64,000 nucleotides of DNA from Laetmonice hystrix (Eukaryota), in contig OZ249443.1 of NCBI GenBank assembly GCA_965235115.1, positions 18,910,001 through 18,974,000 of the forward strand. Reading direction: 5' to 3'. This document shows positions 3,001 through 53,278 of this stretch, piece after piece. How positions within the stretch are numbered: the stretch's first letter is position 1; each line of letters opens with the position of its first letter. The position numbers and the translations under genes are program-made. Below the pieces are notes generated by a model. The model saw only the letters and a list, made by a program, of their open reading frames with translations, was not told where the DNA came from and did no database searches.

Positions 3001-6000
3001 AGGAGAAGCATCTCCTGGAAACGGAGGTGCGCACCAAGATGGAACGCCTGAAGGAAGAGGCCCTGAAGTCTCAGAAGGTTAGTCACTTAACACTCCCAGA
3101 TGTATACGCAGTGGTGTCACTTAGCCTGAGATCTAGGAGATACCTATCACTCAATGTCAACAATTGTTTCTTTTCTGACAGAAAACCCAGATATTCATTC
3201 CTAAATCTACCGGTAAACAAACCCAGTTTGCCTGAGATATATATGCAGGGGTGGCCGATTTTTTAAATAGATCACGTGCCACAAGAGAAGTGCCACCATA
3301 AAAATCCACTTGGCCAGCTCTGACATCCACATGCCTGCTAAACTTGTTAATAAGTCTGTGTTGGGTCAGAGCACTAGCCATTGGGCTATTGTCTTTGGTC
3401 TGTTAGACTTGCCCAACCATTTTTATGAACTTGCCCCGGGCGTCGAGCGATAGGAATCGGCCATGCTGAATATGATTAACAGTTCGGTCTGGACTTTTTG
3501 GTATAGATCATGGCTGAGTCAAGACAACAACACTCAAGGCTTGTTGTCCAGCTGGAGCAAGAACAACAGAAGATACAAAAGGATGTTGAACAGATTCGCA
3601 TGAGGAGAGGGGCAACTCCAAACACACCCAGACTGACTCCGGCGAGGACTCCTGTGACGGAGAACGCACGGACGGACCTCTACCGTCAAACCCTTCTATT
3701 GAGGGAGGCCAATAAAATTAGCCAATGTTTCAAGAAAGATGTGGTCAGTATGACAGCTTGTTTAATGTCGATTAATGCATCACATAATTATATCTAGAAA
3801 GTTAATGATAAATGAAAACTGAAATACAATATTTTATAGACTGTATCTATCAAAATTAGGAAGTAATGCTAATTTCTGACAGTGGATAGGAATGGTCTAA
3901 AAAGTACTGAAAAATCAAAATCAGAATTCAGTGGGAGCCCTGGTTAGCCATTCAAGAAGAAAAGCCAGTTAGTTACCAGGTGCCAGGACTGAGACTGATG
4001 GCTATGTTATACAGGTGTACAGTCGTGAGGAGGTCAGGCAGGGCGAGGACATGCAGACACTGATAAAAGTCACCAACACAAAGCTTGGTATCTCAACCTT
4101 CTGGCCCATGCGCAAATTTGAAGCTCGCCTGCTCCATATGAGGGAACTCTTCCAGGTCAGTTAACGATCTTGTCATGAAAAGTTTGGGTACAGAAGGGAA
4201 AAAAAATCATCAGTGCAAATCTATAAAGAAAAGTGATATAAGATTTCCTTTCTGATTTTGCATCATTAGTACCTAATGGGCGAGCTTTATGTCTAAAAGA
4301 TTGCAGTGAGTATTTTAAATAGCATGGGACTAGTGTTTAAATAGCATGGGACTAGTGTTTAAAAACCATGGGACTAGTGTTTAAATATTATATTATAGTG
4401 CTGTTAAAATATTGCATTTACAAACACAGAGTTGTGACCCCGATCTCAACTCCGGTGAAGCTGATGAGGTATTTAACGACATGAACGACACATGGGAAAG
4501 AGCAGACCGTGGGATATCACCTAAAGTGTGAGTACTTCCCGACAGCCTGACCTGGTACTTCTTTAAATGATTTACAGCAAAATCAGAAGACCTAGGCATA
4601 ATTATTTCCTCTTGGTAGGTGATGGGTTATTTATATAAAATTCGTGAAAGTCAAACTTAAAAAGTATTGTTTCGAGATTGACCTGTATTAGTGTATACTA
4701 CTGTGTGAACGACTCATGTTACTAATTGGCCATAACAAATTAACATGACTTTTCCTTTCCAGTTTACAGAGCCTTAAGAAGTCTGCAGGAAGAGGCTCAA
4801 ACTCATGCATGTCATTTAGCTCGGTCTCAAGTGTAGACAGCCTGGATTCTGACCTTAAGTTTCCGTCGCTGAACATGGAGAACCCTGACCAATCAACCAT
4901 CCAGGAGGGGCCCTCGGTAATCAGCATGTGTCGAGATTTAATTTCAACTGCACTAAATAGGTTCACAGGTGAGTGTTGTTTTGATCATACAGTAGTCAAA
5001 GTCTTAGAGTAACGGTACTCTAAGGTTTTGATCATGTTTTAAGTCTCACAACTTACAGCAGACCCTGCCAATAAACAAGAGTGATTGCTCCTGCTCCCAT
5101 AAATTTGAAAATGCGAGTACAACTGTCATGTGGATGTCTTGAAATCGACTCGTAATCCACTCAATAAAGATTCGTACATGGGTAAATAAACCATGCACTG
5201 GAGGCTTAACTTCCCAAGGTATGATTTTCCTTACACGTTTTCGAGTCGGGAACGGGAGTGGGTTCCGGTACCCCGTCAACTCCCCTAACATCACATACGG
5301 GAGCGATTGATGACTCCTGCACTCATATCGTAAAGCAGGCACTGTTACAGCATATTATTCCTGCTACTCCGTTATCTTCTAAATGCATAAGAAACCAAAC
5401 TGGATCAGGATAATTTTTTGTATTACTTTCTTCTGTAAACGGATACTTACGTTATTTCATTTTGATGGTGTCATTTGTTCTTCAGAGGTGGCGCTGCAGG
5501 AGAGTGTTGTTGACAAAATTCTGTGCCATTGTGAGGTCCTGAAACATGCCATAACATCAATGTTAGAATCCTTCAACTTGGCCTCAGAGTCTCCACTGAC
5601 CAAGGGTAAGTCCCCAGTCCTTTAACTTCCAGTCAAGAGTACATGTAATTTGAAATTACATTACATTACATTTTCTTTAAATTTAATTTTTAATATTAAA
5701 GCAGACAATGCACTAGATTCTGATTCTATACTTGAACGTTGCCTATTCTGATATTGGTTGTCCTGTTGCCAGGTGAGTTCCTGGGTTCTACAGTGATGCA
5801 GGTGAGCAGCATTCAGCTGGCATCGCACATGGAGATCGTACTGACCCAGTGCACCCTCTGGGTGGGGTCATACGAAACACTTACCTCGGGGCTCGTCCGT
5901 GACCTCTGCACCCACATCATGTCAACGGCTCGCAAGTTAGGAACGCAACTGGTGCTTTTCCTGCAGGTCAGTGTCTGGTTCCCATCAGAAAACACTTACA

Positions 6001-8068
6001 TCAGTTGATGAAGTCCATTTACTGCCCACCTTCGGATGGAATGATAAATAACATGCCGCTAGCATTGTTATATATTTAACCTTTATGTTCAGTTGAGAAT
6101 TAAGGTTTGACACCACATTTGAACATCTTTGAAACCCCCATATTTTATATTGAATTTTGATCTGTAAGCATTGAGTATTTCTACCTGATGAACAGGGTTG
6201 TGAGAACGATATCGACACACTGGTCCAGGAGTCGGCTGGCCAATCACTGAGCAGTCTCTTCACTCTAAGCAAACACTGCGGTGAACTGGCTCTTGCCACT
6301 GAGACTGCTATGGTGTGTTTGACCGACACCAGAGGGAGCATGGGAGGAGAGGAAGAGGACGAGGAGCAGACAAAGATAAAGGTAACATAAATTTTGAGGT
6401 CATTGGGTCATTGTCTGAGAGTGAATTTCAGATTTTGCATCACTTCAAATTCTAAAGAAGATCTTTTGTTTTAACTGGCATCATTTGATCATTTTTCTAA
6501 AAGAGTGAAAAGGAAATGATCCCTGCTCTTCCCCCCCCCCCCAGCGTCTGGAGAGTCCCTGAATATTTGAGAGATTCGTCTCCTTTATAGCAGAGTCTTT
6601 ATGCTAAATCTTATGCCAAACAGTGGCTAGGTTGAGAAGATGACTAGAAGAATGATGAACTATACTAGATGAACAGCAATTATTTGAATGGAATTTTTTT
6701 CTCAGGTCAGCCATGACATTCGTCAGTCGTTCCTGTCAGGTTGTGACCTGTTCATTGATAAGACGTTAGAAGGTGGACTAAGGACTGTCCAGGAACAAAT
6801 GTCATCTGTTCAGGCTCTAGCTGACGACAGTGAAAACATGACGGTTAGTACGACACTTTCAAGGCCATTTCTAATTTTTAATAACATTGAAGTTGGTTAT
6901 CGGGAATATTGGGTCTATTGGGAAATTCTCAGCATTGATTATTTTAAAAATGCTCAAGAAACATTTAGAGCTACAAACAGAATCCCAGTACATACAAATA
7001 TAAATGTCTCTGACTCCGTGACTGCAGGAAAGCATGGAGGAATTTGTCTGCCAGGCGGCAGTGGTCACGGGACATGGGAAGGACATGCTGAAGAAATGTC
7101 GCCAGATGCAGGTGAGCCTTGCAGTCTCATTATTAATCTTGTAGTATGAGACTAACTCAGATTGTGAGAGGTTTAAAAATAAAAATAAGAGATAAATCAT
7201 AACTCATGAAGAGCAGATCCATAATATGTGCATGAGACACAGTGCGCCTATTATAAAATGTGGCCGACATTTTGCATAGTGCGTTCTTCCCGACTATTAC
7301 TCACAATACTTCTTTCTACATTTGTAGAGTGATCTAGACTTAACGCTCCGTGATAGTTTGACGGAGTCCAAACCAGAGTGGTACTACAGTCGCAGCTTTA
7401 GACGATCTCAGAGTCTGGTTAGCCACATCAGTAACCTAACGGAAACAGTCACTCACCTCGTTCAAGCGACACGGTCCTACACCAAAGGTAAAAACAATCA
7501 CTACTCTGCTTATTGGTTTGTTAGTTGATATAGTGACACAGATGTCATCACTAGATAAAATATAAGTTTCCTAGGTTATTCCCTTTAACCGGTATATTAA
7601 TCAGAGAATAGTATGTGATTTAATTATGTTGCGGTACGATTACTCCCTATTATTTTTTTAGGGACCGATGCAACAGCTTTAAGAAAGGTGTGTCGCATGT
7701 GTGAACTCCTGCAGAAGTCCACCTCCAAACTTCTGTCATCATCAAATATTGATCCAGTGGCAAACAGCAGTTTCAACGAGAGTGCTTCCAATACTTCTGA
7801 CACGTCAGTGTTGTCAGAAAGTCGCAGGGAGGAATTAGAGGCTGCTGCCTGTGAAGTAAAAATGTCAGCCGACTCTCTGATTAGTCTCACTAAGAAACAT
7901 GAAGCTACAGGGTGTGTTCAAACTATGGAAGCTCCGAGCCGCAGTAAACGCCTGCTTCCGTCATCACCAGTGACAGGTAGTGGTGTGACAAGAAGGGACT
8001 CTCTCAAGGAGGCTAGCAGCCATCGGAAGGTCCAGGCACTGAAGAGAGCTTTCGAAAACACTTCATAG
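1..8068 (+). CDS. KIF14: Kinesin-3 family KIF14-like, C-terminal part (5' end outside window)
   Basis: Phase-consistent exons: 2355-2547, 2925-3077, 3507-3743, 4015-4155, 4430-4527, 4763-4968, 5486-5605, 5773-5966, 6196-6381, 6706-6843, 7028-7111, 7328-7487, 7662-8068 (TAG). Peptides LLLREANKIS and KVTNTKLGISTFWPMRKFEARLLHMRELFQ match the recalled human KIF14 IQEANAIS / VRNLKLGISTFWSLEKFESKLAAMKELY. A large open exon at <1-1344 (donor GTAAGT at 1345) is phase-compatible with 2355, but its inclusion is less certain. Confidence 0.85.
239..484 (+). repeat. Coding 39-bp tandem repeat, 6 full copies plus a partial (13-aa unit E[TA]HGSPL[RK]NSPxx)
   Basis: Units start at 239, 278, 317, 356, 395, 434 and 473 and lie in frame in ORF 128-1348. 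Confidence 0.95.
3246..3468. mobile_element. Possible hAT-like MITE in a KIF14 intron
   Basis: Imperfect TIR CAGGGGTGGCCGATT vs reverse complement CAGCATGGCCGATT; internal ACTTGCCC repeats; flanks tatatg/aatatg (imperfect 6-bp TSD). Confidence 0.45.
4314..4386. repeat. 22-bp tandem repeat x3 (tttaaatagcatgggactagtg)
   Basis: Three direct copies plus a partial, visible in an intron. Confidence 0.9.
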
Positions 8069-9951
8069 CACTAAACACAAAATATCTCAGTATCCTGTAT
8101 CCTACAATATTTGGATGAAACGGTGGCTATACAAAATGGGAGAACATGAAAGTGTGAGCCGTTTCAAACATTGATACAAGAGTTGAGAAGGGTGCAACTG
8201 CCAGCTGAATGCAAACGACCTTTAACTGCTTTTGTCTCATCAGGAAAAATAAAACCAGCAACCTTGGAAAATATGTACATGTACTTCAAAAACTTCCCCA
8301 GAAAGATGTTCAGTGAACCTCCTACACCTTTGGTATTTTTGATAAGACGATATGTAAGCAGTTTATAATCATTCCTATTAGTATTTAATATTACAGTAAC
8401 TTTCATATAACTCTTCCTACCACTATGTGGATAAGGTTTGGGAATTTGTCCTAATGATGGCAATTACCGGGTTGTTCTGATATGCATGGCATGAACACCG
8501 CGGTGCTCCCCAGAAAGTAACCTTTGCATGTGAGTATAGTGTTAAGTATTCATGTTATTGTATATAATGCTAATGCTACCTGGTGAGTAGATCTCGGAAT
8601 CAAGGGTCAGGAGAGCAAGCCATATTCTGTATAGGTTACCTGACAATGTAAATAACTGGAGGATTGTAGGAATGAATGACAAGATGCTAGTTTATATGTA
8701 AGGGGCTTGCTGCAAATACCACAGGTCAACAACTGTAAGATATGACTGTGATAATATGCTACCATGTAGATAACCCACTGTTGTACAGAAGTGTAGATTT
8801 AGAAGTTCTTGTATTTCTATGGTATCAAATTTAACGTCAGGTTTAGAGTCAATCAGATGCCTGTGTAAGTGTGTAGGACTGAGTGTATGCTAAATGAAAT
8901 ACGTTTAATAATTAACATGGTTGAAAGGATAATTTGCACACATTTTGTTCCATGGGCCACTGACATTTAAATGTCGGCAGGGAAGAGTTCAAAGGAAAAT
9001 ATAATGGCTTGGCAGTTTTTGAGTAAGCCACCTTGAAATGTTTCTGATTATGTACAGAGAAAAGTTCCTATTAGGTCATAAAGTGGAATTTGTAATTTGT
9101 TATCAACCATGCATTATAAGCAGGTCAGCAGTGTATCGACATGACCTTGTTGTTTTTCAGTGCCCTATATAATTTATATAATTAATTGCTATTAGCAGTC
9201 ATATACAGAACCTTGCTATTTGGTACTGACCTGCACAACTGAAATCTACAGATATGTGCTATTTGGTGACCTGCACAACTCTACAGATGTGTGCTATTTA
9301 ATTCTGATGTGTATATTCTCTAGTCTTGCTTCAAGCAGTATATTATATTCATGTACTGGTACTTCAAATTCTTATAAAAGAATTTACTAATGCATGAATA
9401 GTAATCAACTTACTTTCGTCATATTTATTATAGTAGTTTATTTAGGAAATTATTTAAGGTAGACGGGCGGATTAGACTGAAAATAATATTAAGTAATTTA
9501 AAGCCCGAGTCCACTTAAAAAGAAAGGGTGGTTCAACCTGTGTCAAGTACAAAAAAATATATATAAAAAACGAAAAATACCACAAAAAGGGGTGGGAGTC
9601 GACCCCCTCCCTCCAAATCCGCATATGCATGATTATGCCGACACTTTTTGGCTTAGAAACTGGCTTTGCAGACGTTCTCTCCAACGGCAATGGGCAACAT
9701 GGGCGAAATGCGGCAGCGCCGGCTGGTGGGAATTTTGAGAAACCTGAAGCAGATATCACCTCGTTAGTCGACTACAGTACATGACAACACAGGTCCACTA
9801 TGAAGGATCAGTTCGGCTTTTGAGGTGATATCTTTTTTAGACATGCAATTATCCTTACCCTTTGTTTTAGTGAAGTGAGTTAGTTTGAAACTCACGCCGG
9901 TTACGCCGCTGCTCAGGCTTTGGCCTCCGACAGACGCGCATTTGTTGGCCT

Positions 9952-10033
9952 GGTTCCCCTGCCCACCGCTAGGCTTCTTGGCGCTGATGGTCGCTCATCA
10001 GCGCCAAGGAGCGTAGCGGCGGGCAGGGGAACC
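9952..10033. repeat. GC-rich inverted repeat, 38-bp arms with 3 mismatches and a 6-nt loop
   Basis: Arm 1 ggttcccctgcccaccgctaggcttcttggcgctgatg pairs with arm 2 catcagcgccaaggagcgtagcggcgggcaggggaacc. Confidence 0.9.
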
Positions 10034-11265
10034 TGCGCATTTGGCAAAAACTGCTGCCGTCTGGCTTTAAGCTGACTAGTACGTTTCCAAGAATTCCCGC
10101 CAGTAGGCGCTACGACACGAGTACTGTGTTAGCCCAGGTGGTGCTGGGTTGGGTAAATCTCCTGAGAGAGCAGTCCTTACGATAACGGGGGGCAACAGGA
10201 TGGTCAAGGGGGGGGGGGGGGTATTAGAAAAAGCGGGGTCCTACACCGATCCTATAATGGCAATAGTCTGCCTAATGTTCTATTCCTGTTGCCAAATATT
10301 TACAGGAGAGAAGCGCGACGGTAGGCCTGTGCTCCAAATTCTCAGGACATGAATCAATGGACCTTGAATTCTGTCAAATTCACAATAATGATTTGGGTTA
10401 CTTTAAATTTGGCATCTTATTGTTCTATGCAATGTCTCCTGTATTTACACTCGCCAAGCAGCAGATTCTGAAAAATCAAATTTACCCCCTCACAAGCAAA
10501 AATTATTTGGTCCAAACATTGTTATATTTGCATGCAAGACACGAGCCGTGTGGAAGGAACCTGTCTAATGTCTGTCATGGTGCAGATCCTATGGATATTG
10601 CTGTACATGTATTAAGCGACTGCATTTACTGTCATGAAAAAATAAAAATCTAGCACTTTGCAAATTTCTTCTTCACTTATTTATCTCAGCGACATGTTTT
10701 GTCAGCTACCTTCACAATACCTTTTATCTTGAATTCTAATATATATACGGTAGATAAAAAATTGACAAATGTAATCAAGCTTAGTAAAATGTAATAGAAA
10801 GAATACATATCCAAATTTAAGGGCAAGAGCATAAGGCATATGCATCTAAGAATTTCGCAAGCATTTTTTTACCTTTAACCGACTGCTATTCACTCAATCA
10901 AGCACTTTTGAATTTTCAAGTCCAAAAGTGCATCTGGTAAAACAGAAATCGCCTAAATCGGTACAGGAGATATGGCAATCTTCATACCAACTATCAATGC
11001 TTCTGCATAGAGTGCGTCAACTTAGCAATCCCAAGCTTCCAACATTCCTCATACCATGCGAATCAACTCCTTTCAGTAGGTAAATATTCCTTGCTTTGAT
11101 CATATTTCTTCAAGGGTTATTGGGCAGGAAATGGGACCCCCCCCCCAATAAAAACAACTCTGGCTTTGTGTTTGACTGTTTCTTTATTACAGTCTTTCCC
11201 TGATGTCAATCAGGTTCACGTCATTTACAGCACATCTTTGTACAAGTCTATGTGTTGGTTCACGA

Positions 11266-14200
11266 TTACGCCTTTACTGCAAACTTCCTTTGAGGGTACA
11301 AGCGTTCTTTGCGTTGCTGCTTGGCTGTCTTGATAGACCTCTCGTGCTTGGTGAGAGCCCTTCGAATGGCACGGGTTTTCTTTGGTCGCAGATCCTTGGG
11401 CCTGTACTTTTTGTTCTTGTAGAACTTACGGAGGTTCTCCTTCTGTGTCTGGTGAATGACGGTGTACACACGGGCGATCGACTTGCGCACGATGTGACTG
11501 AAAACATTAATCAGTCAGTTCAGTTTTAGAGTTAGCCAACCTGTTTTGCTTTATAAATTACTTGGCTATTCCTACAAAGACAAATGACAAGAAAAAGAAA
11601 CCTTGGGATTTGGTATATACAAATTATACTTACATTTTGCTCAGTTTCGAGGCAGCACCACCGGTAACTTTGGAAACTCTTAGAGTGGAGAGCTCCTACA
11701 AAGATACAAAACGTTCGAATAAATTACAATTTCTAAGGTGCTTTTTTTCTTAAATGGACTGATATGAAATCACGGTCTGTATATAAGGCTTTTTAATTCA
11801 AAATAAAAAAATATGTCCATTGGCATTTGCTCAGCTCGTTTCTTAATAATCACAAACTTTTTCATGGGATTGACAGATTATATAGATTTACATCATTGCA
11901 AACCACCATGTAATAGACACTTTGGTAATCATATCTATCTATATTAATGTATTAATATATTTGTACCGTGTATGACCATAAATAATAAATCCTACATCTT
12001 TCATTATAAATTACACAGTTTGTGTAATACGAGGGCTATCCCAGGTTTTGATTTCTCAGAGTAGATCGATGACCTTCCAGATTCCAAAGAGCTATAATTC
12101 TACACCATATGATCATATGTAAAAGGATTAGCATGATTTCTCTGTCTCAAATAGTACAAGATTATCTTTCTGTCTGTTGCTGTTTGCTCAGGTCGTTTCT
12201 TCATAATCACAAACTTTTTCATGGGATTGACAGATTATATAGATTTACATCATTGCAAACAACCATGCAATAGACACTTTGGTAATCATATCTATCTATA
12301 TTAATGTATTTGTACAGTGTATGACCATAAATCTGAATATATTCTACACCTATCATTATAAATTACACAGTTCGTGTAATAAGATGGCTATCCCAGGTTT
12401 TTATTTCTCAAAGAGTAGATTGATGACCTTCCAGATTCCAAAGAGCTATAATTCTACATCATGTGGTATTGATGTAAAAAGGATTAGCATTTCTCTGTCT
12501 CAAATAGTACCAGGTTATCTTTCTGTCTCTTGCTGTTTGCTCAGGTCGTTTCTTTAAATGAACAATCACAAACTTTTTTCATTATATAGATTTACATCAT
12601 TGCAAAACACCAAGCAGTAGACATTTTGGTACCACATCAAATTTATATGCATGAACGTCAATAGTGTATGACTAGAAATATTCTAAATAAATTCTGCCCC
12701 TTCTTAATTACAGTTTATTTGGGCTCAAGAGGGCTCGCAAAGGTTTTGATTTCTCAGAGCAGATGACTTTCCAGAATAAATAAAGCTCCTTCTACACTAT
12801 GTGGCATGGATCATATGTACGACAACTATAAGACAATGACAGGACAAAGTTAAAATGTCTTGCTGGTGTTGGACCATAATTTGCTGTTGAAGCACCATAA
12901 CTCTCCATTAAGAACACTTAAAACAATTTTTACATCTAATCTGATTCTCAGGTTTGCTCAGGTCTTGATAGTTTTAATCACAGATGGTCATGGGATTGAC
13001 AGATTATAGACTTGACATCATTGCTTATCCTGAGAAATTTTAATGACTGATCCACTAAGAATTATTTAAATCAACCACTCTGTTCACAAACTGTTTTTCA
13101 TTATATAGATTTACATTGATCATTGCAAACAACCAAGCAATAGACATTTTGGTACATCAAATGTATATGCATGAACGTCAATAGTCTAAATAAATTCTGC
13201 CCCTTCTTAATTACAGTTTATCTTGGGCTTAAGAGGGCTCTCAAAGGTTTTAAGGTATTGATTTCTCAGAGCAGATGTATGACTTTCCAGATTAAATAAA
13301 GCTCCTTCTACACTATGTGGCATGGATCATATGTAAAAGCGCATGCTAATATTTAGGTTTCTCCTGTCTCAAATACATAGTACTATGGTTGTCTTATGTC
13401 TTGACATTTGCTCAGCTTGTTTTCAATTAATCACATTTTTCATGGGATTGACAGATTATATACATTATTACATCACAGCAAATATAGAAATGTCATGTTA
13501 ATAATCCTGTCTAGACTAATCCTATCTATACTTGCTTACACTGCAATTTGACTGATGGTGCTTTCACCCTAGAGTACGACAACTATAAGACAATGACAGT
13601 ACAAAGTCAAAATGTCTTGCTGGTGTTGGACCATAATTTGCTGTCAAAGCACCATAACTCTCCATTAAGAACACTAAAAGAATTTTTACATCTAATCTGA
13701 TTCTCAGGTTTGCTCAGGTCTTTATAATTTTAATCACAGGTGGTCATGGGATTGACAGATTATAGACTTGACATCATTGCTTATCCTGAGAAATTTTAAT
13801 AACTGATCCACTAAGAATGATTTAAATCAACCGTTCTAAATGGTTTGATGCTATATCTGGATGTCTAAAACAAATTTAACTAAGCAGTTGCAATAGGTTT
13901 GTTAGCAGTTTGCAGTTAGCAACCTCTTAAGTCAAAAAGTCTGCTACTGACTTTTTACATCTAATCTGATTCTCAGGTTTGCTCAGGTCTTGATAGTTTT
14001 AATCACAGATGGTCATGGGATTGACAGATTATAGACTTGACATCATTGCTTATCCTGAGAAATTTTAATGACTGATCCACTAAGAATTATTTAAATCAAC
14101 CACTCTGTTCACAAACTGTTTTTCATTATATAGATTTACATTGATCATTGCAAACAACCAAGCAATAGACATTTTGGTACATCAAATGTATATGCATGAA

Positions 14201-17200
14201 CGTCAATAGTCTAAATAAATTCTGCCCCTTCTTAATTACAGTTTATCTTGGGCTTAAGAGGGCTCTCAAAGGTTTTAAGGTTTTGATTTCTCAGAGCAGA
14301 TGTATGACTTTCCAGATTAAATAAAGCTCCTTCTACACTATGTGGCATGGATCATATGTAAAAGCGCATGCTAATATTTAGGTTTCTCCTGTCTCAAATA
14401 CATAGTACTATGGTTGTCTTATGTCTTGACATTTGCTCAGCTTGTTTTCAATTAATCACATTTTTCATAGGATGGAAAGATTTATTACATCACAGCAAAT
14501 ATAGAAATGTCATGTTAATAATCCTGTCTAGACTAATCCTATCTATACTTGCTTACACTGTAATTTGACTGATGGTGCTTTCACCCTAGAGTACGACAAC
14601 TATAAGACAATGACAGTACAAAGTCAAAATGTCTTGCTGGTGTTGGACCATAATTTGCTGTCAAAGCACCATAACTCTCCATTAAGAACACTAAAAGAAT
14701 TTTTACATCTAATCTGATTCTCAGGTTTGCTCAGGTCTTTATAGTTTTAATCACAGATGGTCATGGGATTGACAGATTATAGACTTGACATCATTGCTTA
14801 TCCTGAGAAATTTTAATAACTGATCCACTAAGAATTATTTAAATCAACCACTTTGTTCTAAATGGTTTGGTGCTATATCCGGATGTCTAAAACAAATTTA
14901 ACTAAAAAGTTGCAATAAGTTTGTTAGCAGTTTGCAGTTAGGTCAAAAAGTCTGCTACTGACTAACTCTGAGATCCACATTCTGAATACTATTTTTTTCA
15001 AGTTCAAACTACATAGAAGACCCCCTAGCCCTTTACAAACCAATCCACGAGTCGTAGCTAGTGATCCTCTGAACATTAGCAATTCTGCAACAATTGAAAT
15101 GCTAGTTTAAAATACCATTCAGGTGCTTGCATCAGTCCTATCGATCCATTGGTTATATTTCAGGAATCAAGACCAGTTAGGTTCATCCTCTGCATACACC
15201 TTCTGATTGATTTATAACTTATCCCCTCCCCCACAAAAAAAACAAATTTTCTCTGGAGAAAATTCTTGCAGATAATGCTCTCTCCAAGTCTGGCACTGTA
15301 TGGGATAAGTTGGGCTAAGGGTTACTCAAAATAGGCCCTCTGTCACTGCTTTAGCTTTTAATTAAAGGAATCTTAAATACACTAAAACTTACCACTGAAA
15401 AGGGATTCTCACCTGTACAAGGGCTATAATGGTTTCTAGCCATGGCACGACACACACGACATGGTCAACCACCGTTTCTTCATAAAAATCATTTTCATAA
15501 AATTGCAGATTAATAATTCGAGCTTCTCCAGACTAACATTACAATGCAAGACCCAAATATTTACCTCTTCTGCACTTTCAAGACAAACTACAATAGCTTG
15601 CCCTTATTCAAATTCACATAAATTTTCTTCATTAGCTTTCCTGGTTTTCAACACCCTTGGGTGACTGCATCAGTCCTATCGATCCATTGGTTCTAGTTCA
15701 GGAATCAAGACCATTACAAGTCATCCTCTACAGTCACCCATATGGCATTTATCTGTTACTTCACGTCACAGCTTACTTTCTACTTGAGCACTGTTTATGG
15801 TGGAGATGACTGCCCTTCAGTTCTAGGTAGGTAATCGTGAAGCTAGCAAAAAAAATTTTTTAAGGGTGTAATTTGGTGCAACCTGGTGCCTCTATCGCTT
15901 CCCAACAACTGATTTTCATCATACCTATCACAAGCCGTCTCAGTTTTATAGCACGTGGGTAATTTTCGTTGTATATTGGGCCAACATACAACGAAAATCA
16001 CCCAATCAATATCGATATTATTGGCCCTAAACTATTAACGAAGAGCAGCATCTCAACCCCCTTTGGTCAAGCATCGGGCCTGATACACTTCTACTCCAAC
16101 AAGTCGGAGTCCTTGTCCTTACGGACTCTGACCGTCGAGTACAAATACACCAGCGACTGTTATCCTGCTGGGATCTATCTCGGTCCTTTTGGCGCTGAAA
16201 CTTGCTGAGTACACTAAAGATGTTACTTAACAGATACGTCAATGTATTTTGTTGAATGTTAATTTAATAGGTAAAATTCTCAGTTTGTCACACGGCGCGC
16301 CGCAGATGGCTGACGGAGAGCTCTACGGACCCGACTTGCTCATAAACAACCAGACTGTGTGGACGTTATATTTGCATACCTGCCAACATTTGGTCGACGG
16401 AATCCGGGATCATCCCAAATTGACTTTTGATACTCTCTCTATGGGCCCCTTTCTTTTATCCATCTCTCTCTCTCTCTTCCTCTCTATTACTGACAGAAAG
16501 CACAACTCTGATTTACTAAACTTAGTCTAGAGATCTAGTTATATGGCAGGAACCATAAACGATCTTTTTGCCAGTGAAACTCTGCCATGAGCGAGGTGGC
16601 TCTCATTTGTTGGGCACTTAGCGATTACAATAGTTGATCTAGAGTTGTTGATACACTCCTCTAACTCAGTAGACCGTCCTAGTCAAGTTGACGGCTTTTC
16701 CCGGGACCGCGGCAGGGTGGGCAGAGTCGAGTGTCTATCAGAGGCACGGCGGGCGGGCGGGCGGGCGGGCATAGTACCGAGGGGCGGACATGACCGGGCG
16801 GACATGGAGACGGGCGGACACGTCGTGTATTCTTAGAGAGTAATCCGGAATGCGGAATACCACATTCAAATGCGGAAAGATTCCGCAGAATGCGGAAGGA
16901 TTGGCAGGTATGTATTTGTCCAATAATCATAATCACAATAGAAATTTCATTACCGTTGCTCTCTGAAAATATCGATTTCATGCTCAGTGGAAGAAGTTTA
17001 ATACCAAAACAAAGGCCGCAAAGTTGCGATAACGGACCTCCTGGCAGAGCATCTAAGAATCGCTGGGCTAGGGTCACTCGATAACGCAACACTTCCAAAT
17101 ATTTGTAGTAGATCATAAGGTAGATCACCTTTCTGGTCTGGCACAACCAGTTTCATAAAACTTCCTGTCAATTTACTGACATGGAAAACTTACAGTTTTG

Positions 17201-17772
17201 AGGTCATCCAGCTGCTTCATAAGCTCCTCCTTCTTCTTGCCCCGGAGATCTCTAGCCTTTACCTTCACCTAAAAGGGAAACAAAACTCGACTGCAAACGA
17301 CTGCCAGCTCTGCCTTGTGTCAATCTGTGTTAGGCTTCATTGCCATTTTATACGAGAGCCATGTGCAACAACAAATTAAATGTAGACCGAATACGAGACC
17401 GTCGACTACTACTCGACTTGATTTGAAATTCCCGCTATAAATGTGACTTCATATTCTGCATACTTAGGGCCCTTCAAATACTTTCTAAATACTGGAAACA
17501 ACCGAAATCCTCTGTTATTCGAGGACTCTCCTCTGGGCGATATTTGGTGAAATAATGGCTGACACACACGCACCGAATACCATCAACAAGGACACTAGAG
17601 TATCATCGACAGTAAATATCCCCACAAATACTTAACTAGCGACAACAATATATATTGAAAGCATATATATAAACAATCAGCTGCAAAACTTATAGTCTAA
17701 AATCTTTGAAATCCGCAGGATCTCGAAGATGTAACTCGATTTTTAAAACGTGCTGTACATCATACCAACCAT
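11266..17772 (-). CDS. RPL35: 60S ribosomal protein L35 (uL29), 123 aa
   Basis: Exons: ATG only 17770-17772 (CAAAATG|GTTGGT), 17194-17268 ([25 protein letters not shown]), 11634-11695 ([21 protein letters not shown]), 11266-11497 ([10 protein letters not shown]...RKFAVKA*). AATAAA on - strand at 11183-11188. Confidence 0.98.
11827..11901 (-). ncRNA. SNORD110: Box C/D snoRNA, SNORD110-like (18S Um1288-equivalent guide), copy 1
   Basis: Terminal stem TTGC/GCAA; box C ATGATGT; guide AATCTGTCAATCC (11867-11879) complementary to 18S GGAUUGACAGAUU; D' ATGA; C' GTGATTA; D CTGA. The D'+5 rule points to the first U of GGAUU. Confidence 0.9.
12184..12258 (-). ncRNA. SNORD110: SNORD110-like box C/D snoRNA, copy 2
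   Basis: Same boxes, stem and intact 13-nt guide as copy 1. Confidence 0.88.
12537..12605 (-). pseudogene. SNORD110-like copy with the guide deleted
   Basis: Boxes C and D and stem retained; gggattgacagat removed (ttttcat|tatatag). Remnants with the same deletion at ~13085-13128 and ~14110-14153. Confidence 0.8.
12954..13024 (-). ncRNA. SNORD110: SNORD110-like box C/D snoRNA, variant with external stem (copy 4)
   Basis: C ATGATGT, intact guide, D' ATGA, C' GTGATTA, D CTGA; flanking 8-bp stem TTCTCAGG/CCTGAGAA (12945-12952 and 13029-13036). Confidence 0.85.
13408..13482 (-). ncRNA. SNORD110: SNORD110-like box C/D snoRNA (copy 5)
   Basis: TTTGC/GCAAA stem, box C GTGATGT, intact guide, D' ATGA, D CTGA. 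Confidence 0.85.
13710..13780 (-). ncRNA. SNORD110: SNORD110-like box C/D snoRNA with external stem (copy 6)
   Basis: As copy 4; intact guide. Confidence 0.85.
13979..14049 (-). ncRNA. SNORD110: SNORD110-like box C/D snoRNA with external stem (copy 7)
   Basis: As copy 4; intact guide. Confidence 0.85.
14433..14499 (-). pseudogene. SNORD110-like copy with altered guide (AATCTTTCCATCC)
   Basis: Duplicate of copy 5 with boxes retained, but the guide reads ggatggaaagatt on + instead of ggattgacagatt. Confidence 0.7.
14727..14797 (-). ncRNA. SNORD110: SNORD110-like box C/D snoRNA with external stem (copy 9)
   Basis: As copy 4; intact guide. Confidence 0.85.
15128..15194 (-). ncRNA. Second box C/D snoRNA family, double guide, copy 1
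   Basis: TGCA/TGCA stem; C-like GGATGA; D' guide TGGTCTTGATTC-CTGA; D guide ATGGATCGATAGGA-CTGA, complementary to the conserved 28S segment CCUAUCGAUCC. Confidence 0.8.
15661..15737 (-). ncRNA. Second box C/D snoRNA family, double guide, copy 2
   Basis: 9-bp terminal stem GTGACTGTA/TGCAGTCAC; both guides and all boxes identical to 15128-15194 while spacers and flanks differ. Confidence 0.82.
16690..16832. mobile_element. Solo end of a MULE-like foldback element (GGGCGGACA arms, ...GTATTC terminus)
   Basis: Three GGGCGGACA motifs ending in GTATTC, the same terminus as elements at 39006, 39843 and 47811. No partner end or TSD found. Confidence 0.5.
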
Positions 17773-18117
17773 TTTGGATATCGTATGGCTGCCAAAAGAC
17801 CGAACCCGAGGCTGGCCGAAATTACCAGAGTTCCTGCAGTACGAAAGGAAAGTTCAATCTCGAACGCTTAAATGTTTCATTTAATTGTTTAAGTAATCTG
17901 TTAACCGAAAGTAATATAGTTAATGTAATAGAATCATAACTAGAGTTCTCCCATCTCTGGGTAATAAATATTTATAAAAACTGCAGTATTCTATAGACGG
18001 GATATCAGGGTTTGAGGTAAATATCCAGTTGACTTCCGGGTGGGTGTTGTGTCAGGTCGCCGGTTGTAGTGTACAGCTGGTCAAGTACTCATAATTCGCT
18101 CTCTCAACTCGTAAAGA
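17773..18117. promoter_or_regulatory. Bidirectional promoter RPL35/ARPC5 with TCT/TOP-like start for RPL35
   Basis: Minus-strand TCTTTT at 17794-17799, 26 nt before the RPL35 ATG; ETS-like ACTTCCGG at ~18032-18039; start codons 345 bp apart, head to head. Confidence 0.7.
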
Positions 18118-20232
18118 ATGGCGAAAAATACTGGAAATGCTCAATTCCGTAAACTAAATGTTAATGTATACAGTGATGACGAGGAGGAAGAGGAACCACA
18201 GGTAGATGGAGATACACAAGGACCAAATGAAGGAGAGGTGCAAAGTCTGCTCTCATCGTATCCTTCCGGTTTCCGGGGGGGGGGGGGGGGGGGGGGCTTT
18301 AATTATTTTTGTAAACTCTGTTTGATGTGACTGTTGATTGTTGTGCATGAAGTAGTTGAATTCACAGGCAGTGAGTCACTCCCGTATTTTGGTCCTTTCC
18401 ATGGTCCAAACTTTACTAGTACTGCCGGCTGGTCTTTTAAAAGGTGTGATAGGTAAAATCTTTTTTTTTTTTTGTGGTGGTGGTGGGGGGAGGGGGCAAC
18501 CTGAGTCTTATGGCGATTTCCATGAGATGTGAGCAAGCGATTTGTTTTGGTCAGGTGTGCGTCAAAGGTAGAAATAGTTGATTGCAGTAATTTGCACCAG
18601 ACGCACCCACACATCATGACTTCACGCGCACTTTTGTTAAGGTGGTCATCTTTCGACGTAACAAACTAGGTCTAGGAAATCTTCAGACTCGACGCTGCCA
18701 TGTTGGGTTTTGCGCTCGCACCAGGTGGCAAGATAAAGATATTCTATGTACATTTTTTATTCTTTTATTTAATTTTTTACAGAAATCCAGAAGGTGTGGC
18801 ATGTAGGAAATTTCTGCTAACCGAGGGATGTAAGTGGTCATCTGGGGACTGTGGTATTTCTGGGGGGGGGGGGGGGGGATTTTTCTTGGACAGCCCAAAG
18901 CTGGCTTTTGGCAGGGTTATGTGACTATTAAGCTTCAATCATATTAGATAAGGCCACTTAAAATTAATAAATTGTTTTACATGGCCGGCCGCCTCAGTTT
19001 TTTTGGCGCCGCCTCGATTTTTTTTATATTTTATATTTTTCAAAAAGTCTGTTTTTTTCATCCCCAAAACCGTCTCCCACAGTTCTGTCAGGGTGTTACA
19101 GTTAAAGTGACCCTCAAGGTATAGAAGGGCTGTACAAAATGTTGAGATATTGAGAAATTGAAAGTATTTTTCCAGTATTGGTGATCTCTGTTGTCCTTCT
19201 TCTTGTCGAGGAAAAATATAAAATATAAAATGCACTACTCACCAACATTTCAGAAGTTGGAGTCATGTAAAACAATTTATTAATTTTAAGTGGCCTAATG
19301 CTCTACAGGGGATTTAGGTGACTATCCAATTAACACCCAATTTGCAACAGAAATTAAAATAATTCTCACTCTAGTGCAAAAAGCTGGATATGCCCCTGTG
19401 GGTAATTCAAATACTAGTCCCAGTCTAGGCTCATCCTTAACCATTCCACAGCAACCGAAATCTTGATGCCTTGAAGTTGGCGTTGAATAATTCTCCACTC
19501 AACACCAAAAACCAAGCAGTAAAGGTAAGCAACGTACCAAACACTACAATGCAGTGATCCCTTGTGCAGGCCCATTTTATTGAGAACATCATGTTTGCAA
19601 ATATGTCTCTCATCTTATTGTACTAATCTCCTGTGTATAGTTAGCAGTGCAACAGAAATTCCAGGAATATATTGTAATTTGTACATAAAAATGTTGATTA
19701 ATAAAATATTCCTTTTTAGGACCGTGCGATGCAGTTGGTAGTAAGGGTTCTTCTCTCTTTCAAAACAAGTGAAATTGATAATGCTGTGAAATCACTGGAC
19801 AACACTTCCCTGGACATCTTGATGAAGTACATCTATCGTGGCTTTGAATTCCCAACAGAGGGCAGCAGTGCACAGTTATTAACCTGGCATGAAAAGGTAA
19901 ACAATCAGAATAACTAAGGACTGCCAAAGCAAGTCACAGATATTGTGAATGATAGGCATTTCCTTGGATCAGATGGCTATTTTAAATAATTATGACAATT
20001 GGCCTCAATAGTGAAACTTAAATCTTGTGAGCATTGAATCAGTGATTCCTAATTATATTATGGTCTTTGTACGAAATTATCTTGCATTATAATAATTAAT
20101 GATTTTATTACTTCAAACCTACACAAGACAAGCTATTTAGTCATTTCTTTTATTTCTTCCATTGTCCAGGCATTTGCTGTAGGTGGTCTGGGGAGTATAG
20201 TGCGCGTACTGACTGACAGGAAGAGGGTGTGA
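18118..20232 (+). CDS. ARPC5: Arp2/3 complex subunit 5 (p16-Arc; pro-ortholog of ARPC5/ARPC5L), 150 aa
   Basis: Exons 18118-18257, 19452-19524, 19720-19896, 20170-20232. Peptides [65 protein letters not shown]. Confidence 0.97.
18258..19451 (+). other. U12-type (minor spliceosome) GT-AG intron
   Basis: 5' splice site GTATCCTT at 18258; branch site TCCTTAAC at 19434-19441, 10 nt before the terminal CAG; joining restores the ARPC5 frame. Confidence 0.93.
18952..19295. mobile_element. PIF/Harbinger-like (Tourist-type) MITE, 344 bp
   Basis: Perfect 32-bp TIR GGCCACTTAAAATTAATAAATTGTTTTACATG; TAA TSD on both sides. Confidence 0.85.
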
Positions 20233-51627: not shown

Positions 51628-53278
51628 TCATCTTGAGTTGGAGTGTCTTTCGTATGGTTTTGTGTGACGTTGACGAAGGTTGGAGGTTGAAGGTCGCGAA
51701 CTGGAACTTGTTTCTGGCTGCCATGTCCTTGCTGTGGGGGATGGTGGAACAAAACTGGAGACATCATCTCCCGACTTCTCCATCATCTTCAGTTTGGCCT
51801 CAATTGCACGGATTTGCGACTCTTTGCTGAAAAATTTTTTTTTTTTAAAATAAACTATCCCGAACTATGCAATCGACACAACCTGTGGTAACTTTAAGTG
51901 CAGATTTTAGCACTTTAAGAACAAGCAGAAACATCTTTACTTCTATAATCTGCAACTTTACAAATGTACTCACGTTAGAGGTGGCGGTGCTTTTTTCGTT
52001 ATTTCTACTTTTTGCTCAGGTCGTGGTCGTTTCCTCACCATTACTTCTTCCTGAAAGTTGCAAGTCCACCCAGTCAGTTTTACCCAAATGTTGACACGTT
52101 TGTTTTAACAGTCACCAGTGAAAGTTCTTGACACATACCAAAATCATTTCTAAACATGAGTCAAGAAGCCTCTAAGCCTTAGGCCCCCTAAAAAAAGTTC
52201 TCAGTTTCTGGTATGAAGAACATTTCAAAAGTGGTGGTGACGTCTGGAATTAGTTGGTAAATATATAAGGTGGCATTCCTCACTTCCAATATTTCTTTAT
52301 CATAAATGTACCAGGCACAAATGTAATTATAATTGTATCCAAATTTCTTCCTTTTATTTTGTTCTATTTTTATGCATCTAAGGAAATGTGCAAATTTATG
52401 TGTGATAAATGTGCAAATATCTCCGAGTACAACAAAACTTACTCTCTGATCAACGTGTGCATATTTCACAACCAGTCGACGGTCCGAGGCCAGTACTCCA
52501 TTTAATTGTTTACTGGCTCTTTCTGCTTCCTGAAAAATCGTTACATTGTCATTAACCATAAAAATTACTTTATGCATTGTATTACAAATAATTCATCAAG
52601 ATTGAGAACCAAGAATTTCTCATGGTAAACAGTAAATTAAAGAACATATTATTGCAACACCACATAATATATAGTAGCACACCTCTTTGTTTGAGAAGGT
52701 TACAAAGCAGTAACCTCTTGGCTTTCCTTGATCAGGTCCAGATCGGTGATAGAGGTAGTCAAACTTCTTGAGACCACCAAACCTTTGTAACAACTTCAGC
52801 ATACTAAATCTAGAGGACAAACCAAAAACACAAGATGCTAATAACTTAACGATATTTGTAATCTGTTAAAATCACAGCAGGGCATATCTATAAAGTGTGC
52901 ATGTTACAGGTAGTGTAGATTTTTACCAATGCTCGAGCCACTTTTCTATGATATTTCCTGTACAAACCTGAAGGAGAAAATCGCTCAAAGCAATGTGGAT
53001 AAAATTGAAATGGGGAGTACCGGTATCTGTAATGTTGTGTCAAAATCAATGCATATTTTTATTTCAGCTGAAGTATGAGGGCTCATGTCTTTAAATTATG
53101 GCAGATGAACCATTAATTAATAGATAACTCAGATTGTAGATATCTGTGAAGGGAGGTCATGTAATCCCGCACATAAAACTTACTCTGTCATTTTTGTTGA
53201 TATATTTCCGATCCATAACCGACATTCGTCTATACCTTCTGACAGATCCTCTGGTGGAGGAGGAGGGGGATTCTCCAT
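51628..53278 (-). CDS. RBM18: RNA-binding motif protein 18, 194 aa
   Basis: Exons 53184-53278, 52683-52809, 52443-52529, 51974-52050, 51628-51826. RRM peptides RLWIGNIS and GKPRGYCFVTF; C-terminal QIRAIEAKLKMME. Probable non-coding first exon ends at 54298. Confidence 0.95.

What the first reader, a model, noticed from the sequence alone, without database searches (positions are those of the whole stretch)
11827..14797. Tandemly amplified SNORD110-like snoRNA cluster inside a single RPL35 intron
Seen: seven copies with intact C, D', C' and D boxes, a terminal stem and the 13-nt guide AATCTGTCAATCC, plus decayed copies. All are on the host strand in intron 11696-17193, and I found no internal exons between them. 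Established: the guide pairs with 18S GGAUUGACAGAUU, and the D'+5 rule gives the U equivalent to human U1288, the SNORD110/HBII-55 target. Human SNORD110 is a single gene in NOP56, and vertebrate intronic snoRNAs follow one per intron because release is by debranching and exonucleolytic trimming. As I recall human RPL35, it has no intron at this position (after codon 26). Inference: a polycistronic intronic snoRNA cassette that needs endonucleolytic separation or hidden non-coding exons, coupling one rRNA methylation to RPL35 transcription at amplified dosage.
Basis: partly seen in the sequence, partly recalled or inferred. Interest (0 to 1): 0.8.

Follow-up and report, generated by a model that had tools for sequence, protein, structure and literature searches.

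The report
Tandem snoRNA gene array in RPL35 intron
One 5.5-kb intron of this invertebrate's ribosomal protein L35 gene carries seven intact and four decayed copies of a small guide RNA gene for a universally conserved 18S rRNA methylation; the array is real and under selection, but multi-copy intronic snoRNA arrays are already known from flies and rice and recur elsewhere in this genome.

Summary
Seven box C/D snoRNA genes lie on the minus strand at 11827-14799, plus four decayed copies. All sit inside RPL35 intron 2 (11696-17193). Each intact copy has the 13-nt guide, C, D' (AUGA), C' and D boxes, and a terminal or external stem.

- **Splicing:** contigs from an RNA-like run join the flanking exons directly, so the intron leaves in one piece.
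- **Target:** the guide pairs 14 bp with this genome's own 18S. The D'+5 rule points to U1259, in the same register as the Rfam SNORD110 consensus (human target U1288).
- **Only source:** no other copy of the guide exists in the 627-Mb genome.
- **Selection:** three old copy lineages have spacers only 64-69% identical, yet show 0-1 change in the 36 box and guide positions. At least three copies have therefore been kept by selection.
- **Duplication:** the 1-kb duplication has about double k-mer depth in DNA contigs, which argues against misassembly.

The animal is an invertebrate, so the vertebrate one-per-intron rule is the wrong yardstick. Intronic snoRNA clusters are known in Drosophila and rice. 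The same genome carries five U14 copies in one RPL30 intron. Mature snoRNAs, endonucleolytic processing and raised dosage remain untested. I rate it a new member of a known kind, of moderate interest.

The parts
17770..17799 (-). RPL35 exon 1, with a pyrimidine-rich start and ATG at 17772-17770. The 5' end is approximate.
   Evidence: Sequence read: the exon ends in ATG, followed by a GTTGGT donor.
17194..17268 (-). RPL35 exon 2 ([25 protein letters not shown]).
   Evidence: Translation of the sequence. A spliced contig from run X4 covers 17193-17269.
11696..17193 (-). RPL35 intron 2: 5498 nt, phase 0, GTAAGT...TTGTAG. It hosts the array.
   Evidence: Junction 11694>17193 (cut +1) at contig depth 24571 in X4, also seen in X5.
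11634..11695 (-). RPL35 exon 3 ([21 protein letters not shown]).
   Evidence: Junctions 11497>11634 and 11694>17193; translation.
11266..11497 (-). Coding part of RPL35 exon 4.
   Evidence: ORF 11266-11490; RNA contig depth about 80000.
14727..14799 (-). snoRNA copy B1 (type B, intact). It is the 5'-most copy in the transcript.
   Evidence: (98.4 bits with model R1).
13979..14051 (-). snoRNA copy B2 (type B, intact).
13710..13782 (-). snoRNA copy B3 (type B, intact).
13408..13481 (-). snoRNA copy A3 (divergent type A, intact, C box GUGAUGU).
   Evidence: (SNORD110, 27.7 bits).
12954..13026 (-). snoRNA copy B4 (type B, intact).
12184..12258 (-). snoRNA copy A2 (type A, intact, terminal stem of about 9 bp).
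   Evidence: (SNORD110, 30.5 bits).
11827..11901 (-). snoRNA copy A1 (type A, intact). It is the 3'-most copy, 131 nt upstream of the 3' splice site.
   Evidence: (30.1 bits).
14433..14498 (-). Decayed twin of A3. It carries three substitutions and an 8-nt deletion clustered in and next to the guide.
12537..12605 (-). Type-A copy with the 13-nt guide cleanly deleted. All four boxes and the terminal stem are kept.
14090..14153 (-). Truncated type-A relic with a disrupted C box, no guide and no D box. The lower end is approximate.
13065..13128 (-). Twin of the truncated relic. The lower end is approximate.
12927..14968 (.). Very recent direct duplication of about 1 kb (12927-13951 against 13952-14968). 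Each unit carries two type-B copies, one type-A copy and one truncated relic.
   Evidence: 99.8% identity in the first 517 nt. A DNA contig over 13352-13712 has depth 40.7, against 20-28 for unique flanks.
14632..15069 (.). The only RNA-run contig inside the array. It spans B1 and 270 nt upstream; depth 8.8; strand unknown.
   Evidence: table 8, record 9.

Best explanation
This is an intronic gene cluster of one box C/D snoRNA, built by repeated local duplication inside intron 2 of the very highly expressed RPL35 gene. The snoRNA is the functional counterpart of human SNORD110. Its D' guide directs fibrillarin to 2'-O-methylate 18S U1259, the U in the conserved GGAUUGACAG element.

The array is this genome's only source of that guide. 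At least three copy lineages (A1/A2, A3 and B1-B4) have been kept intact by purifying selection.

Proposed working (inferred):
1. The copies are transcribed as part of the RPL35 pre-mRNA.
2. The intron is excised in one piece.
3. C/D core proteins assemble on each K-turn, helped by the terminal or external stems.
4. Individual 73-75-nt snoRNAs are freed by cuts in the 230-700-nt spacers followed by exonucleolytic trimming. This is how polycistronic plant and yeast clusters are processed, and it is assumed for fly intronic clusters.

Shown: sequence anatomy, target complementarity, one-piece splicing, uniqueness in the genome, and the selection signature. Inferred: expression of each copy, the endonuclease step, and any dosage effect.
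For: - Seven exact guide copies, with 0 of 100 shuffles reaching the count.
- All boxes are intact.
- The best Rfam family is SNORD110, with the guide aligned in the same register. Type-B copies hit snoR14 of the same clan.
- The guide pairs 14 bp with the genome's own 18S at 1256-1269, with U1259 at position 5 from D'. The target is present in 17 rDNA copies.
- Whole-genome searches with an 18-mer pattern and with a covariance model find no other copy.
- Box, guide and stem columns are variable in 3 of 44 cases, against 24 of 34 for the other columns (Fisher 3.7e-9).
- Spacers of the old lineages are 64-69% identical, while the 36 box and guide positions differ at 0-1 sites. The probability of at most 1 change in 36 at 30% divergence is 4e-5.
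- Terminal or external stems range from -8.8 to -14.6 kcal/mol.
- A spliced junction crosses the whole intron at depth about 24600, with no other junction in the array.
- A second case exists in the same genome: five U14 copies in RPL30 intron 1. Across that locus's six copies (one lies in intron 2), four score above the Rfam cut-off.
Against: - No mature snoRNA was seen. The one RNA-like run has zero contig depth over 11870-14469. Its single contig in the array (14632-15069, depth 8.8) is a long RNA, not a 73-nt species.
- No copy reaches the Rfam SNORD110 gathering score.
- D' is AUGA rather than CUGA in every copy.
- Only copy A1 lies near the 3' splice site (131 nt). The others are 488-3031 nt away, far outside the distance that favours splicing-coupled assembly in mammals.
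- Choosing copies by their intact guide biases part of the selection test. Without the 13 guide columns, the boxes (23 positions) still show 0-1 change.
- No relatives' genomes were available to test conservation of the array.
Confidence: 0.72

Rival explanations
1. Only one copy is productive, most likely A1, which is nearest the 3' splice site. The remaining copies are by-products of unequal crossing-over that assemble poorly and are degraded with the intron.
For: A1 ends 131 nt from the 3' splice site, while all other copies are 488-3031 nt away. Part of the array is extremely young, with the 1-kb duplicate 99.8% identical. Four copies have already decayed.
Against: Three lineages whose spacers have diverged by 31-36% still keep 35-36 of 36 box and guide positions. 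That is not expected for unexpressed DNA. Type-B copies carry their own conserved 8-bp external stem. Five intact U14 copies share one RPL30 intron in the same genome.
Confidence: 0.13
2. The excised intron is trimmed only from its two ends, so the snoRNPs protect the DNA between them. The main stable products would then be long snoRNA-ended RNAs (sno-lncRNAs), up to about 3 kb from B1 to A1, rather than, or in addition to, seven free snoRNAs.
For: In mammals, two snoRNAs in one intron give sno-lncRNAs by exactly this route (PMC11028025). No recursive AG|GT splice sites lie between the copies that could subdivide the intron.
Against: The RNA-like run shows no contig over 11870-14469. Its one contig extends 270 nt upstream of B1, so it is not snoRNA-ended. 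The library type is unknown, though, and a poly(A) selection would lose such RNAs. Fly and plant clusters yield individual snoRNAs.
Confidence: 0.12
3. The array is an independently transcribed polycistronic snoRNA unit with its own promoter inside the intron, as in plant and yeast clusters. It would not depend on RPL35 transcription.
For: The single RNA contig stops at 15069. The unique intron sequence just upstream (15070-16069) has zero RNA depth although DNA contigs assemble there. A TATA-like TATTTTAAA lies on the minus strand at 15114-15106 (sequence).
Against: The evidence is one low-depth contig of unknown strand. The region is AT-rich, so TATA-like words are common. All copies are in the sense orientation of a very highly expressed host, the usual animal arrangement.
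Confidence: 0.07
4. Assembly artefact: the array, or its 1-kb duplication, is over-expanded by misassembly of a shorter locus.
For: The two 1-kb units are nearly identical. Short-word contigs of the DNA runs are fragmented across the array.
Against: The DNA contig over the duplicated segment has depth 40.7, against 20-28 for unique neighbours, and mixes variants of both units. The units differ by diagnostic changes. The older copies are far too diverged to be collapsed alleles. The DNA runs may be the assembly's own data, so this check is not independent.
Confidence: 0.03

Closest known systems
Human SNORD110 (HBII-55; Rfam RF00610, clan CL00076, which also holds plant snoR14)
   Same: It is a box C/D snoRNA of about 72-75 nt. 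The D' antisense element AAUCUGUCAAUCC is identical and sits in the same register. It therefore points to the same conserved U of the 18S GGAUUGACAG element (human U1288).
   Different: The human gene is a single copy in an intron of NOP56. Here there are seven intact copies in one RPL35 intron and none elsewhere. D' is AUGA rather than CUGA. The rest of the sequence is so diverged that the best Rfam score is 30.5 bits against a cut-off of 64.
Intronic snoRNA gene clusters of Drosophila melanogaster (Huang et al. 2004, 2005) and rice (Liang et al. 2002), as cited in PMC2780460 and PMC2246290
   Same: Several snoRNA genes lie in a single intron on the host strand, often in ribosomal protein or other translation-related genes. 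The clusters arise by local duplication.
   Different: This case is in a different animal group (reported as an annelid, unchecked). The array is homogeneous, with seven intact copies of one guide. I could not read the primary papers, so copy numbers there were not compared.
U14 (SNORD14) array in RPL30 of this same genome (L033)
   Same: Five tandem copies of one C/D snoRNA lie on the host strand inside a single intron of a ribosomal protein gene, spaced 300-430 nt apart.
   Different: It is a different snoRNA family and host. A sixth copy occupies the next intron. Four of the six copies pass the Rfam cut-off, so family membership there is not in doubt.
Mammalian sno-lncRNA loci and SNORD115/SNORD116 tandem arrays
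   Same: They combine tandem amplification of a C/D snoRNA with cases of two snoRNAs in one intron, whose intervening RNA is protected.
   Different: In SNORD115/116 each copy normally has its own intron in a non-coding, imprinted host, and the guides are orphans. Here the guide has a canonical rRNA target and the host is a protein-coding housekeeping gene.

Membership tests
Box C/D snoRNA (2'-O-methylation guide) | C box (RUGAUGA) near the 5' end and D box (CUGA) near the 3' end, brought together by a terminal stem | tested here: met
   AUGAUGU or GUGAUGU with CUGA in all seven copies. Stems range from -8.8 to -14.6 kcal/mol. In type B the stem is mostly external.
Box C/D snoRNA (2'-O-methylation guide) | Antisense element of at least 10 nt ending next to D or D', with the target nucleotide at position 5 | tested here: met
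   The guide pairs 14 bp (13 Watson-Crick plus 1 G-U) with the genome's own 18S, with U1259 at position 5. Only 1 of 300 guide shuffles matched it.
Box C/D snoRNA (2'-O-methylation guide) | Accumulation as a stable RNA of about 70-100 nt bound by fibrillarin, Nop56, Nop58 and Snu13 | not testable with these tools
   No small-RNA run was available. The one RNA-like run gives only long contigs.
SNORD110 (Rfam RF00610) | Score at or above the curated gathering threshold (64 bits) | tested here: not met
   The best score is 30.5 bits, with E 0.004 in 7 kb and 0.08 genome-wide. Nothing passed at gathering.
SNORD110 (Rfam RF00610) | D' guide to the 18S GGAUUGACAGAUU element, selecting the U equivalent to human U1288 | tested here: met
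   The guide aligns column for column with the family consensus. The target is in the genome's own 18S.
Intronic snoRNA gene cluster | Two or more snoRNA genes in one intron, on the host strand, with no exon between them | tested here: met
   All copies lie on the minus strand within 11696-17193. A single 5498-nt junction is seen, with no other junction in the array, in RNA contigs of two runs. Contigs can miss rare isoforms.
Intronic snoRNA gene cluster | Individual members are released from the common intron | not testable with these tools
   No data. The selection signature on three lineages is indirect support only.
sno-lncRNA locus | A stable long RNA whose two ends are snoRNAs from one intron | tested here: inconclusive
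   The prerequisite of at least two snoRNAs per intron is met. No such RNA appears in run X4, but its library type is unknown.

The most novel reading that the evidence does not exclude
This animal lineage (reported as an annelid) may routinely express essential rRNA-modification guides from homogeneous multi-copy arrays inside single introns of ribosomal protein genes. Examples are SNORD110-type x7 in RPL35 and U14 x5 in RPL30. That would require a splicing-independent, endonuclease-based release pathway, or would produce abundant snoRNA-ended long RNAs. Neither has been described in lophotrochozoans. Copy number could also vary between haplotypes, tuning guide dosage.
Probability: 0.3. Interest if true: 0.55.

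Novelty: new member of a known kind. Interest (0 to 1): 0.4.

Why it matters
The array gives a clean natural test of how animals release several snoRNAs from one intron. The sole genomic source of a universally conserved 18S methylation guide is a seven-copy array in one of the most highly transcribed genes. The copies carry diagnostic differences that small-RNA reads could separate.

Together with the U14 array in RPL30, it suggests that the one-snoRNA-per-intron habit of vertebrates does not hold in this invertebrate lineage. My literature searches found no description of snoRNA gene organisation for that group. It does not reveal a new kind of element or mechanism.

Tried and rejected
- **Rfam at gathering thresholds:** no hit on the whole window.
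- **Genome-wide guide hits outside the array:** C5:17215000 has no C box, and C7:638705 is a microsatellite. Neither is a snoRNA.
- **Recursive splicing as a way to split the intron:** no AG|GT[AG]AG site lies between copies. The only one is at 15414, upstream of the array, and about 0.7 are expected by chance in 5.5 kb.
- **A second snoRNA in the spacers:** the spacers hold a better-conserved block of about 75 nt with a D-box-like CUGA. A good C box occurs in only one copy, where the D box is broken, and the putative guide differs between lineages. I read it as a relic.
- **A second target for the D guide:** A1, A2 and the guide-deleted copy pair 9-11 bp with 28S U3096 (own numbering). Shuffles reach this in 2-3% of trials (28% for A1), and several guides were tested, so this is only a weak lead.
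- **Mature snoRNA or sno-lncRNA evidence from public runs:** no run is on record as RNA. The one RNA-like run is kept as contigs and is silent on small RNAs.
- **Relatives:** none are available. A metagenome scan found nine contigs from two unrelated environmental eukaryote groups, each with a single SNORD110-type copy with D' CUGA. These say nothing about this lineage.
- **Other snoRNA families genome-wide:** SNORD18 and SNORD36 searches found nothing anywhere, including controls, so they are uninformative.
- **SSU family search on the own genome:** it failed twice. A pattern search replaced it.
- **Primary papers:** Huang 2005 and Liang 2002 are not held.
- **Not tested:** the intron positions of human RPL35.
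Full report
**Observation**

The 13-mer AATCTGTCAATCC occurs exactly seven times in the window, all on the minus strand between 11867 and 14778. An eighth site at 14470-14482 has two mismatches. None of 100 dinucleotide-preserving shuffles reached the observed count.

Anchoring on the C box and on CUGAGCAA delimits eleven related units. The seven intact copies are:
- B1 14727-14799
- B2 13979-14051
- B3 13710-13782
- A3 13408-13481
- B4 12954-13026
- A2 12184-12258
- A1 11827-11901

The four decayed units are:
- 14433-14498, with a mutated guide and an 8-nt deletion
- 12537-12605, with the guide cleanly deleted and the boxes kept
- twin truncated relics starting at 14153 and 13128

An alignment of the seven intact copies shows several invariant features: UGAUGU of the C box, a 21-nt block holding the guide, one spacer C and D' AUGA, C' UGUGAUUA, and CUGAGCAA.

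Type-A copies have canonical 5-9 bp terminal stems. Type-B copies have only two pairs next to the boxes plus an 8-bp external stem. Stem energies run from -8.8 to -14.6 kcal/mol.

**Host gene and splicing**

The flanking sequences translate as RPL35. The gene structure on the minus strand is:

| Part | Coordinates |
|---|---|
| Exon 1 | ends with ATG at 17770 |
| Exon 2 | 17194-17268 |
| Intron 2 | 11696-17193 (GTAAGT...TTGTAG, phase 0) |
| Exon 3 | 11634-11695 |
| Exon 4 | 11266-11497 |

The exon lengths sum to 372 nt, a complete 123-codon reading frame plus stop.

Run X4 comes from the same sample as the DNA runs. It behaves as RNA, with contig depth 24,000-80,000 on exons and none on most of the intron. 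It contains a contig joining 11694 to 17193, and run X5 from another labelled organism has the same junction. No other junction falls in the array.

The intron therefore leaves in one piece and there is no sign of internal exons. Contigs can still miss rare isoforms.

The 5' third of the intron (16070-17069) is a very high-copy repeat, with DNA depth above 10,000. The intron has therefore been inflated by mobile DNA.

**Identity and target**

At Rfam gathering thresholds nothing matches. With E-value reporting, the best family for the type-A copies is SNORD110, at 30.5, 30.1 and 27.7 bits against a cut-off of 64. The guide and D' align column for column with the family consensus. Type-B copies match snoR14 of the same clan weakly.

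The genome's own 18S was identified by Rfam in loci L009 and L023. It contains GGATTGACAGATT once, at 1256-1268. All seven guides pair with it over 14 bp, placing U1259 at the fifth position from D'. The target element is present in 17 rDNA copies.

Human SNORD110 directs methylation of 18S U1288 and is hosted in NOP56. The array therefore encodes the functional counterpart of SNORD110. It cannot be filed in the Rfam family by score.

**Uniqueness**

An 18-mer pattern (guide plus D', one mismatch allowed, which would also catch a CUGA D') was run over the whole 627-Mb genome. It finds only these seven sites plus one site without a C box.

A covariance model built from the seven copies finds only the array's own copies. 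The seven it was built from match by construction, and it also recovers two decayed copies. Its one outside hit is a microsatellite. The array is therefore the only detectable source of this guide.

**Duplication history and selection**

The spacers of type-A units are homologous. Pairwise identities are 88.6% for A1/A2, 84% within the A3 group, and only 63-69% between these groups. Type-B flanks do not align with type-A flanks.

Against this background, the 36 box and guide positions differ at 0-1 sites between lineages, while the 34 other internal columns differ at 14-19 sites. The probability of at most one change in 36 positions at 30% divergence is about 4e-5.

Over all seven copies, 3 of 44 box, guide and stem columns vary, against 24 of 34 others (Fisher 3.7e-9). 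Selecting copies by their guide inflates this figure. However, D' and C' were not used for selection and are also invariant.

I conclude that at least three lineages have been under purifying selection, which implies that they are expressed.

On top of this old structure lies a very young duplication of about 1 kb (12927-13951 against 13952-14968). It is 99.8% identical in its first 517 nt. The DNA contig covering part of it has depth 40.7, against 20-28 for unique neighbours, as expected for two real copies.

Three substitutions and an 8-nt deletion are packed into 21 nt of the guide region of copy 14433-14498. The surrounding ~870 nt of this young duplicate carry only four substitutions. I cannot explain this clustering. 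A single complex mutation or a conversion tract are the simple options.

**A second case in the same genome**

The Rfam U14 model finds six copies within 2.9 kb on contig C20, four of them above the gathering score. Reading the locus shows they lie in RPL30:
- Exon 1 (MVAQKKS) and exon 2 (KKAIESINSRL...) are collinear with the known protein.
- These two exons are separated by an intron of about 2.2 kb that holds five U14 copies.
- The sixth copy sits in the next intron.

Homogeneous multi-copy snoRNA arrays within single introns of ribosomal protein genes are therefore a habit of this genome, not a peculiarity of RPL35.

**Mechanism**

Shown: the array lies in a very highly expressed host, the intron is removed in one piece, and every copy has what a C/D snoRNP needs.

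Inferred: snoRNPs assemble on each copy, and free snoRNAs are produced. Exonucleases entering from the intron ends would stop at B1 and A1, so releasing internal copies needs cuts in the spacers. Without such cuts, snoRNA-ended long RNAs should form, as in mammals (PMC11028025).

Recursive splicing cannot do the job, because no AG|GT[AG]AG site lies between copies.

Only A1 is near the 3' splice site (131 nt). The others are 488-3031 nt away. Splicing-coupled assembly as described for mammals could therefore serve at most A1. This conclusion rests on established knowledge and was not tested here.

The one RNA contig in the array (14632-15069, depth 8.8) extends 270 nt upstream of B1 and stops where unique intron sequence continues without RNA cover. 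That is compatible with a processing intermediate or an internal start site, but a single contig of unknown strand proves neither. The contig also combines variants that no assembled B copy combines (14740 G with 14757 G, 17 nt apart). It therefore comes from an allele absent from the assembly.

**Comparison with what is known**

[quoted passage not shown] A recent review lists them as a standard category, while noting that animals predominantly follow one snoRNA per intron (PMC11028025). In flies, the introns of 27 cytoplasmic ribosomal protein genes host snoRNAs.

The present array is a further member of this kind in another animal group. Other agents' notes call the animal an invertebrate, and one says polychaete; I did not check this. 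A search for snoRNA, intronic and annelid returned nothing relevant.

**Verdict**

The reading as an amplified SNORD110-type intronic cluster is right in substance. Its claimed exceptionality rests on a vertebrate rule that does not apply here. Processing and dosage remain untested.

Noticed in passing
L033 (G000:C20:4431000-4440999) 4656-7536, minus strand: There are six U14 (SNORD14) copies here, four above the Rfam cut-off. Five lie in RPL30 intron 1 (about 2.2 kb, between the MVAQKKS exon and the KKAIES exon) and one in intron 2.
   Followed up: yes
window 14433-14498 compared with 13408-13481: Within a duplicate that is otherwise about 99.5% identical, three substitutions and an 8-nt deletion cluster in 21 nt of the snoRNA guide region. 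This is far more than the local rate predicts, and the cause is unknown.
   Followed up: partly
window 14632-15069: This is the only RNA-run contig inside the array. It ends at 15069 although unique sequence continues. It carries a variant combination that no assembled copy has, so it comes from another allele. A TATA-like word lies at 15114-15106 on the minus strand.
   Followed up: partly
window 12537-12605, 12184-12258, 11827-11901 (D-guide segments): The sequence upstream of the D box pairs 9-11 bp with the genome's own 28S around U3096, just after the conserved GAAAUACCACUAC element. Shuffles reach this in 2-3% of trials (28% for A1). The guide-deleted copy has the best match.
   Followed up: partly
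window spacers, e.g. 12040-12125, 12395-12480, 13250-13345 (minus strand): A block of about 75 nt is better conserved than the rest of the spacer. It has a D-box-like CUGA, and a proper C box in only one copy. It is probably the relic of another C/D snoRNA or of an older half-unit.
   Followed up: partly
window 15392-15414, minus strand: A single recursive-splice-like site (..cttgtacAG|GTGAGA) is followed 22 nt later by a strong GTAAGT donor, upstream of the array. About 0.7 such sites are expected by chance in this intron.
   Followed up: no
window 16070-17069: A very high-copy repeat occupies the 5' part of the intron, with DNA contig depth of 10,000-38,000 against about 24 for unique sequence. 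It is presumably a transposable element.
   Followed up: no
window 15122-15200 and 15660-15738: Two copies of a 79-nt element, 84% identical, lie 538 nt apart in the intron upstream of the array.
   Followed up: no
window 53037-53207, plus strand: A sub-threshold match to the H/ACA snoRNA family snR31 (35 bits against a cut-off of 45, E 0.004).
   Followed up: no
window 9951-10034: A GC-rich palindrome matches the mir-3173 model on both strands (43 and 42 bits against a cut-off of 84). It is probably just an inverted repeat.
   Followed up: no
window 18118-19917, plus strand: An ARPC5-like gene ([15 protein letters not shown]..., ...[10 protein letters not shown]...) lies head to head with RPL35. 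Its start is about 350 bp from RPL35 exon 1, which suggests a shared bidirectional promoter region.
   Followed up: no
L022 (G000:C1:4000-12000) 2855-5756: In the rDNA unit at the start of contig C1, the 28S match stops at model position 2355 of 3401. This copy is truncated or interrupted, whereas the unit in L023 is complete.
   Followed up: no
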